Part shown: positions 20,325 through 45,200 of the stretch, in pieces | Position numbering within the stretch: position 1 is the stretch's first letter | Layout: the number at the start of each line of letters is the position of its first letter | DNA from: Perkinsus chesapeaki ATCC PRA-425 | Taxonomy: Eukaryota > Protista > Perkinsozoa | Direction of reading: 5' to 3' | Assembly: GCA_013115145.1 (NCBI GenBank) | Contig: JAAPAO010000214.1 | Location: 1 to 52,084, forward strand | DNA length: 52,084 nucleotides | Notes under the pieces: generated by a model | What the model was told of the DNA's origin: nothing | What the model saw: only the letters and a program-made list of their open reading frames with translations | Database searches by the model: none | Program-made: the position numbers and the translations under genes

Positions 20325-23300
20325 ATGACTAGTTCTCTATCACAGCTGCCCGGCAAGGACCAGAGTCTCTTCAGACAAGTAATATAAAAGGAGGGGAAGG
20401 CAGTTTACGGTTTTTCTATCAGATGGTACGGTACTATGAGACCAAGCAATACAAGAAAGGCATCAAATGCGCCGATCAAATCTTGAAGAAAAACCCAAAG
20501 CACGGAGAGACGGTGTGCATGAAGGCATTGATAATGTCTTACGTTAATCCAGAGGATAAGAAGGAGGCATATGAGTTGGTTAAGCAAGGACTCTTCTACG
20601 ATCTTAAGAGTCACGTCAGTTGGCATGTGTAATAATACCATATTTCCGTCTGATCGTGGTCTAAAAAGGCCTCTCCAGGTACGGTTTGATGCACAGAGCC
20701 GATAGGAACTACCAGGAGGCCGCCAAGTGCTACAAGAATGCCCTTAGAATCGATCCGGAGAACCAGCAAATCTTGAGGGATCTTTCAATGCTTCAAGTGA
20801 GCTTCGCTCCGCCCTATTTTGAATGCACGTTTACCATTTTTAGCTTCACCAGCGCGATTTGGAAGGATATACGGAGTCACGCCGGAAGCTGCTGTCGTTG
20901 AGATCGTCTCAAAGGATCAATTGGATGGCTTATGCAGTGGGAGAGCATATGTTGGGCAATTACGATGTTGCTAAAACGCTGTTAGACTCTTATAAGAAAG
21001 TAATAAGGCATGTGAGATGGTGCAGTGGTAGAGCTACCGTTTGTGGAGGGGAAGGTTGTGGGTTCGATACATAGGGAAGGCGTTTCTATTAGTCGGTTTT
21101 TTTATTAGAACTTTGCAGCGGAAGTCTCCGAGGATGCAGACTCGAAATACGAGCAGTCAGAGCTCTACCTCTACCAGGTGAAGATTCTCCCGAGGTCGAT
21201 TAGCTGACCTTCCCTTCAGGCTGTCCTTTTGGAACAAGGCGGGGAATTGCAGGAGTCACTGGATATCTTAGAGGATCATAAAAAGTAGAAATAATTTCCG
21301 CGGTTAAGTCGGGAAATTATTTTCAAGGGAAATTGTGGACGGCACGACGAGACTGGAAAGCATCGCGCGGCTCTCAATGGGTTTGGGAAAGCTTGATAAG
21401 GCAGCGGCAGCGCTTAAGGAACTCATAGTGGACTACAACGCAGAACAGGAAAGCTACGTGCTTGCGTGGCTTAGCTGTGTGGAAGACGGAAAGTAGTATA
21501 GGAAGGATGGTCTAACGGTATAATTCAAAGTTTTCATGCGAGAGGTCGTAGGGTCATTTCCAGGATGGTGCATTCTCAGGTTTTCTAACTTTTGGCCGCA
21601 AATGACTTCGAAGGAATGCTGCTGGCCGGTGAATTCTGGCCTTCTTCCTAAAGGAGGCGCGAGGGTAGTGGGGAGGGCACGGGTTCGATTCTCGATAGAT
21701 GCATTTTATTGGCACTATTAGTGGGACCTGTTAGGTTCGTGGATGGTTGCCAAAACCAGAAGATAGGAAGATTGCCGCGCCAGTCGAGGTGGAGTTCGCT
21801 CCTGAGCTTAATGCTGGGAAAAAGAGTAATCCTTGGAGCTGATTTGTATCTTGCACGCTCCAACCTTGGATACGTTTTAGCTCTTCTCGTAAAGGGCGGG
21901 TGCAAAGCTCTGTATCGACCGGCCCGAGAGCTCACCGTTGAGGAAGAGCAAGAAGTCATGAAAGCTTTCGAAGGTCTCAATGCTGACGTAAAAAAGGAGA
22001 CCGGTAATTAAGTCAGGCGGAGCGAAGCGATTTTTATTTCCAATTTTCAGGATTTTACTCGGGAACAATCACCAAATGCATCTTGCTGTTCTTGACTGGC
22101 GAACGTTTCGAATCGAAACTGAAGGAATATGTTACTAAGCAGCTCTGTAAAGGTGTACCGTCAACTCAAAAGTAATAGGGAATCTTTCTCCGCTATGAAG
22201 TGCACGCTTCAACCTCTCTCAGATTGCTCCGAGTGTTCTACAAGCAAAGTGCTAGCAAGCAGCTAAGTGTTGATCGTATCGTTAAGGAGTGTGAGGCTGA
22301 AGGAGAGGAACTTATCGCTCTCGCTGATGCACGCTCGAAGGCCACAGACGCGGCGGATGTGCCCAAGCCACGCGAAGGGTTGGCCAACCTCCCGCCAACC
22401 TACGCGTGCTTTGCCTTGCTCTTGGCAGCAAACCACCTGGATCATATAGGCAGCTACTCGGAAGCTGTAATGAAAGGAATTTCGTGGCGCAGTGACGAAG
22501 ATTGGTGTTGTTCGTTTAGATGGAGAAGATACAACGTGGATTGGAAGTTAGTCCTACTTGCATTGACCTTTACGTGTCGGCCTCGAAAATGTAGTATTCG
22601 ATGGTATCTTTGCGCACTATAAAGAATATCTTTTCAGCTTAAAACATGAGGAGCGCTTTGATGAAGCTGCCGAGTATATGGACAAGGCTCGACGGATGGA
22701 CTTGGCAGACAGGCAGCTTAACACACTCAGTGTGAAGGCGCAGCTGAGGAAGGGTGATATTGACACAGTAAGATAATATTAGGATTTCATACCGTATTTC
22801 TCACTGATCGCGACGGTTTTTATTAGGCGAACTCCCAAATTATGTTATTTGCTAAGGAGAATGACACGATGACCACGTCGAACCTTTACGATATGCAGTG
22901 TATGTGGTGGGAGATCAGAACTGGCATGGTAGGCGGCGGCGGCAGCGGAGCGAAGTGATTTTTGTTTACACATTTCGGCTTAGTTGTACGAAGCTCGAGA
23001 AGACTATAGCATGGCCCTAAAGCGCTTTAATGATGTTTTGAAGCAGTTTGAGGACATCCGCGATGATCAGTTCGATTTCGCGACCTACTGCATGAGGAAG
23101 ATGACTTTGAGAACGTAAGGTTCCGGGAAGGATCGTCGGCGCCGTCATTTTACGCTTTTTCTATCAGATTCGTCGAGTTCTTAAAGACAGAGGACAACTT
23201 GGAGCAACATATCTACTATAGGGAGGCGAGCGCTGGTGTGATACGATGTTACATGAAGTTGATGGATAAAAGGGAGAAGGAGGCAGCCGAGGCGGCCAAG

Positions 23301-42229: not shown

Positions 42230-45200
42230 GTGTCCCCCGATTTCCAAAACCACTGTCCATTTCCCCCAGTCTAGCGAACCACAGTCATCGTTTTTCATAA
42301 CCTATGCTGCTGGCGAACCAATTTCATTATTTCGCATTGAGGATCAATATTGCTCAGAGCCTGTATCGTTAGCGCAATCAGTTTCTTGGGACACTCATCT
42401 CAGCAGCTTCAGCAAAGCCTACCCCTGATTTGTGACCGACATCTATCCTATATGAAGCACTTATTATTAAACAACACCAACAGCAGCTGCGCAATCTTCC
42501 CCTGCACAGCAGCTTAAAGCGTCAATAGTAACGGACCTCTCAATCATCAGTTAGTGAATCAAGTCGCGGGTGACCACAAACGTTACCAGAAATATGACCA
42601 CCATATTTCCCTCTACTACAAAGCCACTCCTTTTTTAGTTGAATTCGGTTGCTGTTTGTTCAAAGTCTTGGCATACTCCTGCACATGCTGTCGAACCTGA
42701 GAACCCCACCACCAGCATCCGGGTTCGATCCCACCGTCTAGCATTTTAAAAGAAACAGCCACGCATGGTTCATAAGGTTCATATGGTCTTATGGCAATTT
42801 GCTGCAAATTCGCCTTATGGCGAGTTTCGGCACTACGAATTAACGACTATCTAACAGTATTTACTCCACATCAATACGAAAGAAGATGCTGATGGATATT
42901 ATGTCCCTTCTCGGATGCATGCGAATCAACCTCGAAAGAATCTTTCTACCTGTTCCTGTTGCGCGGCTGGAAGGACATTAAACATCCCACAGACTCGTTG
43001 CTTTTCCACGGGATTCTCCGCCGAGCTATCCAAAGTAACCCCACATGACGCTTCTGCCATTTACGGAAATAATCCAAGGCCTATGATACATCAGTCAACC
43101 TAATATGCATCATGTACGCTCAACTTAAGGATTCTCTAGTATAATATACCACAGGCAAATACGAGCTTATTGAAATGAATGCAAATAAAAAATATAAACG
43201 AAATATCTGTTCGCACTGTTATAGTCAGGAACCGACCTAACAATGTCAATAAGCTCTACTGATCAAGCATCAACTATCGAGGCAGCAGCAGCAGCAGCAA
43301 TCTTCAAAAATGGAGGGTAGTAATATCTCGTAAACATCTTAGGCAAATCTAAATGAGTTGCACTGGGAATTTTCCGACTTAGACGATCCCAACTGAGCTG
43401 CTCGAGGCAGATTGAGTGAATATCGATCATGGTTGCACTGACGTAATATACTAATAATATCTACACCAATCTATAAGCACTAGATCTTCGCTGCGAAAGG
43501 GCGGAGGTCCCCAATACTATATCACTACAAACCAAAGAATGACCTCCTTCCGCTCAACAACCACAGATGAGGTCAACGAATATAAAGCAGATGCCTTTCT
43601 TATACAACACAATACAGTATATAGCAACAACCCCTCCCCCCAAAAAAACTATAACTCAACAACCGTCACTGCGCCACGAAATTACCAGTCCACTGGTCAT
43701 GCCTTCAGCGGCCCCAGCCATAGTGCCAATGTCTCAGCCCACACTTTTTCAGATCTTTCTCGTACCCACCATATTTAAAGTCAACTCTACCATTCCAGTG
43801 CTCCCCTCGATCCTGGGGCAGCACTCTAACCGATGCCTATAAAAAGGTACGTATTCGAACCGAGGACCTTTCGAATGACAGTCAAGCGCTCTACCAACTA
43901 GACTACCTCGTTTCTCGTTTTGTATTCCTTATCTGCCTGTAGTGTCGTTACTCCTAAGGCTTCCTTAACCATCCTGTCCATCAGTTCCATCGACACAAAC
44001 TCATCTATCCGCTTCGGAATGCCTTTACTCTCCTGACATACACCACCTCCATCACACATTGTTCAATAAAGTGTATTGCTGCTAATATTAATAATAGCAA
44101 ATCCTATCTCGACAACACATACTGACAAAAACCAGCGGAGCGGGGAAGTGGGAAATTCCGATGCGATCCGATTTTGCCAGTAGTCACGACTCGTGCTTAG
44201 CCCATGCCATTTCGCTGGAATAAATTCGACCTAGGCCGACCAGCCACTCTTCTGTTTACAACATCACTTAGGAATTGCATTGGGAGTGCGCCGATTAAAA
44301 CAGATACCAAGACGAGGAGTACTTCTCAGCGATGGACCAAAAGCTTCTGCTCTAAAGCTTGTCCACTGTCAGGACAACCTGTAAATTGTCACCCCGCTCT
44401 AACCGTGCTTCCGCTCTATTTAGCCACACTCCCGTGACTTCTTCGTGTCACCAATTCACATTGACGCTGCGCCGAGTGAGTGATTGGTTGACGGTATTGG
44501 GTTCCCAATGCCACCACAACCGGACAAGTATCCCTTTCCTTGGCCGCCGAGCAAGCCCATATATTCCCGAAACTCTACTCCTCACATCGTGCGAGAGTAT
44601 CTTTTCGATCGCCACCTCGAAAAGATCTCCCAAAATTTGATTCCTCGGTGACGCTGCGAAGCCCCACTGGGACACCTACGCGCGAAAATCCTGCGGAAAG
44701 TAATAAATGGTATAACCTGCTGATTGGGCATGTTCCCCAGACTAAAAACTAAGTCATCGGACGGCCGAAGGAGCTCCTCTATACTTTCCTTGCATCGAGT
44801 ATCGATATCAAAGTAAACCCCTCCTAATGATAGGCAACAAGCTGCACAAGTGTGTTTATGAATACTACCGACTGATACTGTATCAGTGATAAATGAAACG
44901 GAGACTTTAGAGCTTCTAGTATATCGAAAGTAACCCAGGCACTGTCAGCGAGCGTTGATTTAATACACCAATGAAGGAGTGACTAACGGTGCGTGATCGT
45001 GGAAGGAAAAGCAAGTATGATGCTTATAGAGAACGAATTCGGGGGTTAAGAGATGACCGTGAGGATCATCGATAAATATGTACTCCTCAAAGGTGGAGTA
45101 GGAAGAGGAGATATAATATAAAATATGTTACTACTACGGAGGCGGAGGAGGTCTAATATAAAATACCAGTGTGGGAATCGTCAGTGATAATTCGCCATCA

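What the first reader, a model, noticed from the sequence alone, without database searches (positions are those of the whole stretch)
43837..43906. A whole tRNA body as a precise 70-nt intron
The donor GT coincides with tRNA positions 7-8 (G-T8-A9-G10). It is followed by TAGTTGGTAGAGCG (A-box/D-arm), TTGA-CTGTCAT-TCGA (anticodon arm), AGGTC (variable loop), GGTTCGAAT (T-loop) and CCTTTTT-ATAG. The upstream exon end AACGAG plus G can pair 6 of 7 with CCTTTTT (counting one G-T), as if the 5' acceptor strand has been absorbed into the exon. Splicing joins YKTRNE|ASVRVL in frame. This is the strongest single indication that a tRNA copy became an intron through its intrinsic GT and terminator-adjacent AG.
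Basis: partly seen in the sequence, partly recalled or inferred. Interest (0 to 1): 0.85.

Follow-up and report, generated by a model that had tools for sequence, protein, structure and literature searches.

The report
tRNA relic filling a Perkinsus intron
The last intron (70 bases) of a sugar-transferase gene in this Perkinsus parasite is a worn-out tRNA gene almost from end to end, and the distantly related P. marinus has a tRNA relic in the same intron, so this is an old example of an undescribed link between tRNA genes and introns.

Summary
Window 43840-43912 (-) matches the Rfam tRNA model at 26.7 bits, just under the cut-off of 29. It is the only sub-threshold tRNA match in 59 kb. Relaxed ARAGORN calls it tRNA-Asp(GTC).

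The 70 nt at 43906-43837 very probably form a real GT-AG, phase-0 intron. The flanking exons are 85% identical in protein to P. marinus, while four-fold degenerate sites are saturated (32% identical). Both species have a stop codon soon after the donor. The GenBank P. marinus model splices at the same codon boundary. No RNA reads were available.

The P. marinus intron (103 nt) is also a tRNA relic, with a perfect A box and a near-perfect B box at tRNA spacing. The relic therefore most likely predates the species split.

Neither copy folds as a tRNA. The promoter boxes are better preserved than the stems.

In P. marinus the donor lies 3 nt off in tRNA register, and the acceptor lies 29 nt beyond the T-run. 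The "absorbed acceptor strand" is not conserved. No intron-less ortholog was found.

This scan has already flagged and followed up the same class of tRNA-derived introns on other DNA of this genome. I found no published description.

The parts
43837..43906 (-). 70-nt GT-AG, phase-0 spliceosomal intron. It is the last intron of the glycosyltransferase gene and has an in-frame TAG at its third codon.
   Evidence: The orthologous intron is L001 931-1033 and L002 3813-3915 (103 nt). P. marinus model P0037 joins ...KTNDG|ISVRVL....
43840..43912 (-). tRNA-like sequence of 73 nt, a decayed tRNA gene with anticodon GTC. Its first 6 nt lie in exon Y.
   Evidence: Rfam RF00005 at 26.7 bits, full-length alignment. 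Relaxed ARAGORN reports tRNA-Asp(gtc). There is no stable fold: z = +0.64.
43894..43905 (-). A-box-like motif TAGTCTAGTTGG (tRNA positions 8-19), with one mismatch to TRGCNNAGTNGG.
   Evidence: P. marinus has a perfect TAGCATAGTGG at the corresponding place.
43875..43881 (-). Anticodon-loop remnant CTGTCAT (anticodon GTC).
   Evidence: The P. marinus counterpart is CTGTGTA (GTG).
43851..43861 (-). B-box-like motif GGTTCGAATAC (tRNA positions 52-62), with one mismatch to GGTTCGANTCC.
   Evidence: The P. marinus reference has GGTTCAAATCT.
43841..43845 (-). T5 run. It sits where a Pol III terminator would be and also serves as the polypyrimidine tract, 4 nt before the acceptor AG.
43907..44032 (-). 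Exon Y, 42 codons: ESKGIPKRIDEFVSMELMDR...EYKTRNE.
   Evidence: Same length and frame in P. marinus (L001 805-930).
43705..43836 (-). Exon Z, 43 codons plus the stop: ASVRVLPQDRGEHWNGRVDFKYGGYEKDLKKCGLRHWHYGWGR*.
   Evidence: 93% amino-acid identity to P. marinus, with the stop at the same position.
44586..44675 (-). Exon X, 30 codons. It is followed by a 553-nt intron (44585-44033) that is only 52 nt long in P. marinus.
44717..44823 (-). Exon W, carrying the DXD motif (GGVYFDIDTRCKES...). The intron that follows it (44716-44676) is 41 nt.

Best explanation
The 70 nt at 43906-43837 (-) are a real phase-0 GT-AG spliceosomal intron. It is the last intron of a DXD-motif (GT32-like) glycosyltransferase gene. 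Its sequence is a dead tRNA gene of the GTC/GTG-anticodon type (Asp or His), lying in the sense orientation of the host gene.

The relic was most likely already in this intron in the common ancestor of this Perkinsus species and P. marinus. It no longer encodes or folds as a tRNA.

What has survived best in both lineages is the Pol III type-2 promoter layout: an A box, a B box about 45 nt downstream, and a T-run. In the window's compact copy the T-run now also serves as the polypyrimidine tract in front of the acceptor.

Shown: the tRNA likeness; conserved coding exons on both sides; the same intron position and phase in two species; a tRNA-promoter signature in both introns; no cloverleaf fold.

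Inferred: (a) that it is spliced, since no reads were available; (b) that both relics descend from a single ancestral copy; (c) origin. I favour a tRNA gene that lived in a short intron, as intact tRNA genes of this genome appear to do, then died, with the intron contracting around it (about 0.45). (d) That the boxes are retained because they still bind TFIIIC or Pol III (about 0.3).
For: tRNA likeness:
- Rfam tRNA scores 26.7 bits over the full model length and is the only sub-threshold hit in 59 kb.
- Relaxed ARAGORN reports tRNA-Asp(gtc).

Real intron:
- The upstream ORF has a 68%-identical counterpart in a Logan contig, L001. L001 is 97.4% identical to P. marinus ATCC 50983 GG678123.1 (L002).
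- Exons W to Z have equal lengths in both species. Over 149 codons, amino-acid identity is 85% and codon positions 1+2 are 89% identical, but four-fold sites are only 14/44 = 32% identical.
- Introns are 70 against 103 nt, both GT-AG, at the same codon boundary, each with an early in-frame TAG.
- The GenBank P. marinus protein P0037 reads ...EYKTNDGISVRVLPQD..., which is the same junction.

Host gene: PF04488 at 31.4 bits on P0037:1-165, with a weak hit on the window's own exon.

Relic in P. marinus:
- The only exact A box (TRGCNNAGTGG) in L001 lies in this intron, against 0.10 expected for the whole locus.
- A strict A-box...B-box pattern hits L002 only in this intron. A relaxed version hits only this intron and the true tRNA-Arg gene. 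Shuffles gave 0 to 0.005 hits.

Boxes against the rest, in tRNA register: A and B boxes are 17/22 identical between species, against 14/44 at four-fold sites (Fisher p = 6e-4). The rest of the body is 20/42 identical (p = 0.19).

No fold: z = +0.64 and +0.51.

Not a recent repeat: there is no second copy in the window or the loci.

Intact tRNA-Trp genes lie between GTAAGT...CAG pairs ~108-125 nt apart.
Against: - There is no transcript evidence. No RNA run was listed as holding the stretch, and the two small runs of the species label laid 0 contigs.
- cmscan and ARAGORN do not call the P. marinus intron a tRNA.
- Direct intron-to-intron similarity is only marginal: p = 0.026 for the full introns, 0.076 for the interiors, and 13% of random L001 windows score as well. 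Common descent of the two relics therefore rests on shared position, orientation and register, not on isotype-specific identity.
- The anticodons differ (GTC against GTG).
- Against selection on the boxes: the two P. marinus haplotypes differ at 6 of 103 intron positions, against 2.6% locus-wide. The differences include G53 to C in the B box and TTTT to TTCT.
- Only two species could be compared.
Confidence: 0.75

Rival explanations
1. Intron gain by insertion. A tRNA gene copy landed in the coding exon and was tolerated because G7-U8-A9-G10 mimics a 5' splice site and the oligo-T terminator followed by AG mimics a 3' splice site. The first six tRNA bases became two new codons.
For: In the window the donor is exactly G7-U8, and the acceptor AG follows the T5 run by 2 nt. 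The intron is almost exactly tRNA-sized, 70 nt. The exon-end residues that would come from the acceptor strand (NE against DG) are the least conserved in the exon. GTAG- donors are also used elsewhere in this gene, for example GTAGTG in the P. marinus X-Y intron.
Against: In P. marinus the donor is 3 nt out of register (tRNA positions 4-5) and the acceptor lies 29 nt past the T-run. The 'absorbed acceptor strand' pairs 3/7 there, and the window's 6/7 is expected fairly often against a T-run. There is no target-site duplication at the junctions. No intron-less ortholog was found. Live tRNA genes of this genome already appear to sit in short introns.
Confidence: 0.3
2. Independent occupancy or refreshment. 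An old ordinary intron at this site was invaded separately in the two lineages by different tRNA copies (Asp-like here, His-like in P. marinus), or was overwritten by gene conversion from live tRNA genes. The shared A and B boxes would then only reflect universal tRNA positions.
For: Identity between the two relics is concentrated in universal positions (boxes 17/22) and is not significant elsewhere (20/42). The anticodons differ. The window's copy is far better preserved (26.7 bits) than the P. marinus copy (no cmscan hit), despite supposedly equal age.
Against: It needs two hits in one ~70-100-nt intron, in the same orientation and starting within 3 nt of the donor. The non-universal stretch GCTTGA(A)CTGT in the anticodon arm is shared. 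In the P. marinus copy the stems are near random while the boxes are near perfect. That is differential decay, not what a young neutral copy would show.
Confidence: 0.12
3. Chance resemblance, or not an intron. The region would be non-coding and the tRNA likeness and reading frames accidental.
For: The score is below Rfam's gathering threshold, default ARAGORN misses it, and there are no RNA reads.
Against: The tRNA-family E-value is about 6e-5 over 59 kb. The exons show a strong purifying-selection signature and share a stop codon with P. marinus. The orthologous intron carries an independent tRNA-promoter signature.
Confidence: 0.03

Closest known systems
tRNA pseudogenes and tRNA genes nested in introns of protein-coding genes
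   Same: A tRNA gene body with A box, B box and T-run lies inside a Pol II gene's intron. The stems are decayed and there is no cloverleaf fold.
   Different: Here the relic is essentially the whole intron (70 nt). Its 5' end overlaps the splice donor and its terminator doubles as the polypyrimidine tract. It has persisted across two species whose synonymous sites are saturated.
Introners and transposon-derived introns (Micromonas, fungi, dinoflagellates; review PMC11282704)
   Same: The intron sequence derives from a mobile or multicopy genetic element, and the element's ends may supply the splice sites.
   Different: There is no multi-copy near-identical family (no second copy in 52 kb), no terminal inverted repeats and no target-site duplication. 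It is old rather than recently gained. The source is a tRNA gene, which the review does not mention as a source of introns.
tRNA-derived SINEs
   Same: A tRNA-related head with an internal Pol III promoter, found within genes.
   Different: There is no SINE body or tail beyond the tRNA. The length equals one tRNA, and no family of copies was seen.
ETC (extra-TFIIIC) sites and B-box insulators of yeasts
   Same: Isolated B-box (and A-box) motifs are kept without a functional tRNA. B-box-like motifs are 6-fold enriched in this window: 15 found against 2.5 expected.
   Different: Binding of TFIIIC is untested. One P. marinus haplotype carries G53 to C in the box.
Dada DNA transposons inserted in P. 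marinus tRNA genes (PMC3706591)
   Same: The same genus. It shows that Perkinsus has unusually many tRNA genes (more than 500 copies across five types) and mobile-element traffic at A boxes.
   Different: Dada elements are 4.7-11 kb transposase-coding insertions into tRNA genes. Nothing of that kind is present at this locus.

Membership tests
Spliceosomal (U2-type GT-AG) intron | GT...AG boundaries, with removal restoring a conserved reading frame | tested here: met
   GTAGTC...TTATAG. The join gives ...KTRNE|ASVRVL.... P. marinus has the same boundary and phase with a 103-nt GT-AG intron. Each intron has an early in-frame stop.
Spliceosomal (U2-type GT-AG) intron | Flanking sequences are coding exons under purifying selection | tested here: met
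   149 codons: 85% amino-acid identity, positions 1+2 89% identical, four-fold sites 32% identical. Non-coding DNA is not alignable between the species.
Spliceosomal (U2-type GT-AG) intron | Junction observed in RNA | not testable with these tools
   No RNA run was listed as holding the stretch. 0 contigs were laid from two small runs.
Functional tRNA gene (RF00005) | Score at or above the Rfam gathering threshold, or detection by a tRNA finder at default settings | tested here: not met
   26.7 bits against 29. Default ARAGORN gives no call and only the relaxed setting does.
Functional tRNA gene (RF00005) | Cloverleaf with four intact stems | tested here: not met
   T stem 2/5, D 3/4, anticodon 4/5, acceptor 6/7 using exon bases. 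The minimum-energy fold is not a cloverleaf (z = +0.64).
tRNA-derived sequence (pseudogene or relic) | Collinear full-length similarity to the tRNA model, with A box, anticodon loop, B box and T-run in order | tested here: met
   The alignment covers model positions 1-71. The A box and the B box each have one mismatch, and a T5 run follows. P. marinus has a strict A...B pattern hit.
Introner / transposon-derived intron | Many near-identical copies serving as introns in unrelated genes | tested here: not met
   No other copy in the window, L001 or L002. Only 52 kb of this genome was available, so the test is limited.
Introner / transposon-derived intron | Target-site duplication or terminal repeats at the intron ends | tested here: not met
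   The junctions CGAG|GTAG...ATAG|GCAT share only the AG|G splice consensus.
TFIIIC-bound ETC-like site | B box conserved beyond the neutral expectation | tested here: inconclusive
   Boxes 17/22 identical against 14/44 at four-fold sites (p = 6e-4). Universal tRNA positions would also match under independent origin, and a P. marinus haplotype has G53C.
TFIIIC-bound ETC-like site | Occupancy by TFIIIC or Pol III | not testable with these tools
   This needs ChIP or small-RNA data.

The most novel reading that the evidence does not exclude
In Perkinsus, tRNA genes are a direct source of spliceosomal introns. A tRNA copy inserted into a coding exon would be removed by the spliceosome because N7-U8-A9-G10 acts as a 5' splice site and the oligo-T terminator plus a nearby AG acts as a 3' splice site. 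The A and B boxes would then be kept for tens of millions of years as TFIIIC or Pol III landing sites inside Pol II genes. This locus would be a full-length, cross-species example of that route.
Probability: 0.25. Interest if true: 0.85.

Novelty: new variant of a known kind. Interest (0 to 1): 0.6.

Why it matters
Where new spliceosomal introns come from is a long-standing question. The documented sources are mostly transposons (introners). A short intron that is one dead tRNA gene from end to end would add tRNA genes to the list of intron raw material or intron residents. It sits at the same site in two Perkinsus species with saturated synonymous divergence, and it keeps its Pol III promoter boxes better than its stems. 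That hints at cross-talk between Pol III factors and Pol II genes in a compact alveolate genome.

This locus is a useful test case for four reasons. The relic is full-length. It lies in the sense orientation. The host gene is small and conserved. And the two species show different stages: a compact 70-nt form and a 103-nt form with extra 3' sequence.

Tried and rejected
I did not resend those letters to any reads tool.
- More species.
  - A 233-aa open segment of the gene as a protein query found nothing.
  - A metagenome scan with the exon-Z alignment and with a degenerate DNA pattern for HWNGRVDFKYGG found nothing.
  - The representatives search with a SAC3 exon gave only distant eukaryotic homologs.
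  - A profile of those homologs plus the window's exon pieces finally recovered the P. marinus protein, but no third Perkinsus species.
- Parent tRNA. The three tRNA-Trp genes in the window are clearly not the parent. No Asp, His, Asn or Tyr genes of Perkinsus were available, so the isotype rests on the anticodon remnant alone.
- cmscan and ARAGORN on the P. marinus intron were negative. I relied on promoter-box patterns with shuffles instead.
- The DNA search rejected two gapped patterns that began with IUPAC codes. I redid them in Python.
- Rejected: Trp as the parent; a high-copy repeat; RNA structure as the conserved feature.
Full report
**1. What is in the sequence**

On the minus strand the window reads ...AAG GAA TAC AAA ACG AGA AAC GAG | GTAGTCTAGTTGGTAGAGCGCTTGACTGTCATTCGAAAGGTCCTCGGTTCGAATACGTACCTTTTTATAG | GCA TCG GTT AGA GTG CTG....

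- The Rfam tRNA model aligns over its whole length (positions 1-71) to 43912-43840 at 26.7 bits. The gathering score is 29, and E = 0.002 in a 501-nt search.
- In a permissive scan of the window plus one related locus (59 kb, both strands, 4227 families) it is the only tRNA match below threshold, with E = 0.24. By my own division that is about 6e-5 for the tRNA family alone.
- The three matches above threshold are intact tRNA-Trp genes elsewhere in the window.
- Default ARAGORN does not call the element. With relaxed thresholds it draws a 73-nt tRNA-Asp(gtc) at the same coordinates.
- In the model alignment the splice donor GT is G7-U8.
- Stems pair as follows: acceptor 6/7 (five of those partners are the T-run), D 3/4, anticodon 4/5, T 2/5.
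- The RNA does not fold better than shuffled sequence (z = +0.64 for the 73 nt and +0.51 for the intron), and the best fold is not a cloverleaf.

It is a tRNA gene relic, not a tRNA gene.

**2. Is it an intron?**

No RNA data could be brought to bear. No run was listed as holding the stretch. Two small runs carrying the species label laid nothing. The reads tool refuses loci fetched by the look-up of encoding contigs, and I did not resend those letters. The case is therefore comparative.

*Finding the ortholog.* The 54-codon open stretch upstream of the element found a 48-aa ORF, 68% identical, on a Logan contig, L001. L001 is 97.4% identical to P. marinus ATCC 50983 scaffold GG678123.1, fetched as L002. 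The comparison is therefore between this Perkinsus species and P. marinus. Earlier scan notes call the window's species P. chesapeaki; I did not verify that.

*Exons.* Four consecutive exons have identical lengths in the two species:

| Exon | Window (-) | Note |
|---|---|---|
| W | 44823-44717 | carries the DXD motif |
| X | 44675-44586 | 30 codons |
| Y | 44032-43907 | 42 codons |
| Z | 43836-43708, stop 43707-43705 | 43 codons |

Over 149 aligned codons, amino-acid identity is 85% and codon positions 1+2 are 89% identical. Four-fold degenerate sites are only 14/44 = 32% identical, which is saturation. blastn aligns only the exons between the species.

*Intron.* Exon Z ends ...KCG[L/I]RHWHYGWGR followed by a stop at the same place in both species. 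The interval between Y and Z is 70 nt here and 103 nt in P. marinus. Both are GT-AG, at the same codon boundary (phase 0). Both have an in-frame TAG within the first four codons. Exon Z can therefore only be translated after splicing.

*Annotation.* The GenBank P. marinus model P0037 reads ...EYKTNDGISVRVLPQDGGEHW..., which uses exactly this junction.

*Host gene.* It is a DXD-motif glycosyltransferase. PF04488 scores 31.4 bits against a cut-off of 23 on P0037:1-165. The window's exon W gives a weak hit (E = 0.007).

I rate "real spliced intron" at about 0.9.

**3. The ortholog's intron is also a tRNA relic**

cmscan and ARAGORN find no tRNA in the P. marinus intron. The promoter motifs tell a different story.

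- Four nucleotides after the donor it carries TAGCATAGTGG, a perfect A box (TRGCNNAGTGG). This is the only exact match in the 6975-nt L001 on either strand, against 0.10 expected.
- 44 nt after that T8, the reference allele has GGTTCAAATC, a B box and T loop.
- A strict A-box...B-box pattern at tRNA spacing hits L002 (12.8 kb, both strands) only in this intron. A relaxed version hits only this intron and the genuine tRNA-Arg gene. 200 shuffles gave means of 0 and 0.005.
- Read in tRNA register, the P. marinus copy has loop CTGTGTA (anticodon GTG), against CTGTCAT (GTC) here.
- It keeps 4/5 anticodon-stem pairs, but only 2/4 D-stem, 3/5 T-stem and 3/7 acceptor-stem pairs.
- A TTTT run follows its 3' end. 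A further 29 nt precede the acceptor.

Both species therefore have a sense-oriented tRNA relic that starts within a few bases of the donor of the same intron. A single ancestral copy is the most parsimonious reading.

The direct evidence for common descent is thin. Intron-to-intron alignment gives p = 0.026 for the full introns and 0.076 for the interiors, and 13% of random L001 windows score as well. Outside the universal tRNA positions, the only notable shared stretch is GCTTGA(A)CTGT.

**4. What is conserved**

I aligned the two relics by hand in tRNA register (two 1-nt gaps) and tested the counts.

| Region | Identical between species | Fisher test against four-fold sites (14/44) |
|---|---|---|
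| A box and B box | 17/22 | p = 6e-4 |
| Rest of the tRNA body | 20/42 | p = 0.19 |

Within each copy the boxes are near consensus, with one mismatch each in the window, while the stems are decayed. This is what selection on TFIIIC/Pol III promoter elements would produce. It agrees with the window-wide excess of B-box-like motifs: 15 with at most one mismatch, against 2.5 expected and a maximum of 7 in 100 shuffles.

There are two caveats.

- Universal tRNA positions would also coincide if the two relics came from different tRNAs.
- The two P. marinus haplotypes differ at 6 of 103 intron positions, against 2.6% for the locus. The differences include G53 to C in the B box and TTTT to TTCT. That does not look like strong constraint.

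I put "boxes still functional" at about 0.3.

**5. Origin**

The window's copy fits that picture, but the ortholog does not.

- In the ortholog the donor lies at tRNA positions 4-5.
- Its acceptor is 29 nt past the T-run.
- Its exon end pairs only 3/7 (all G-T) with the 3' strand.

The window's 6/7 pairing is also not surprising. Purines pair with a T-run, and the two G-C pairs involve the donor G and the usual exon-final G. There is no target-site duplication.

By contrast, two intact tRNA-Trp genes of this window lie antisense between GTAAGT and CAG signals only about 108 and 125 nt apart. This is consistent with first-reader notes that live tRNA genes of this genome sit in short introns.

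I therefore favour a resident intronic tRNA gene that died, with the intron contracting around it in this lineage (about 0.45). Intron creation by insertion gets about 0.3, and independent occupancy or gene conversion about 0.12. No intron-less ortholog or third Perkinsus species could be obtained, so the route remains open.

**6. Comparison with what is known**

Text searches found no description of tRNA-derived spliceosomal introns in Perkinsus or elsewhere.

- The review of transposon-derived introns does not mention tRNA genes as a source (PMC11282704).
- Perkinsus introns are reported as 39-1622 bp, mostly under 100 bp (PMC3101222).
- P. marinus has more than 500 copies of five tRNA gene types, plus Dada transposons that insert at A boxes (PMC3706591).

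The element is not an introner in the defined sense. It has no copy family within reach, no terminal repeats and no target-site duplication. It fails the tests for a functional tRNA. It is best filed as a tRNA pseudogene or relic that coincides with a whole short intron, which is a new variant of known kinds.

This scan has already noted and followed up the same class of tRNA-derived introns on many other pieces of this genome. This locus adds a full-length, sense-oriented, cross-species case. It is not a new phenomenon.

**7. Verdict**

- Observation: confirmed.
- Real intron: strongly supported, but without RNA evidence.
- tRNA origin: supported in two species.
- Interest: 0.6.

Noticed in passing
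L002 3001-9773 (P. marinus GG678123.1); window 43705-43060: The GenBank P. marinus model P0037 (1029 aa) fuses the DXD glycosyltransferase with the downstream SAC3/GANP (LENG8-like) gene. It does so by splicing out of exon Z before the conserved ...KCG[LI]RHWHYGWGR* end. Both species keep that stop, and the next gene has its own ATG (window 43060). This is probably an annotation fusion.
   Followed up: partly
window 44033-44585 (-): The intron between exons X and Y is 553 nt here but only 52 nt in P. marinus. The extra sequence matches nothing else in the window or the loci.
   Followed up: partly
window 36684-36768 (+): This apparent GTAATA...CGTAG intron contains a tRNA 3' half (AAGGTC CCCGG TTCGATT CCAGG CATTGTCA TTTCT) with an exact B box.
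   Followed up: no
window 42722-42732 (+): A B-box-like GGTTCGATCCC lies antisense inside the first intron of the SAC3/LENG8-like gene, between exons 43033-42947 and 42699-42619. No counterpart was seen in the same P. marinus intron.
   Followed up: partly
window, whole: B-box-like motifs (GGTTCGANTCC with at most 1 mismatch) occur 15 times against 2.5 expected (maximum 7 in 100 shuffles). None of them is in the three intact tRNA-Trp genes.
   Followed up: partly
window 24383-24492 and 25045-25175 (+): Intact tRNA-Trp genes lie antisense between GTAAGT/GTAAGA and CAG signals about 108-125 nt apart, so they fill most of what look like short introns.
   Followed up: partly
window 21018-21070 (+): This is the only place in the window that fits a relaxed A-box...B-box pattern at tRNA spacing (TGGTGCAGTGG...GGTTCGATAC).
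   Followed up: no
L001 931-1033 vs L002 3813-3915: Two P. marinus haplotypes differ at 6 of 103 intron positions, including G53 to C in the B box and TTTT to TTCT. The whole locus differs by 2.6%.
   Followed up: yes
L002 9912-9986 (+): An intact tRNA-Arg(TCG) gene lies about 140 nt after the end of the annotated SAC3 gene in P. marinus.
   Followed up: no
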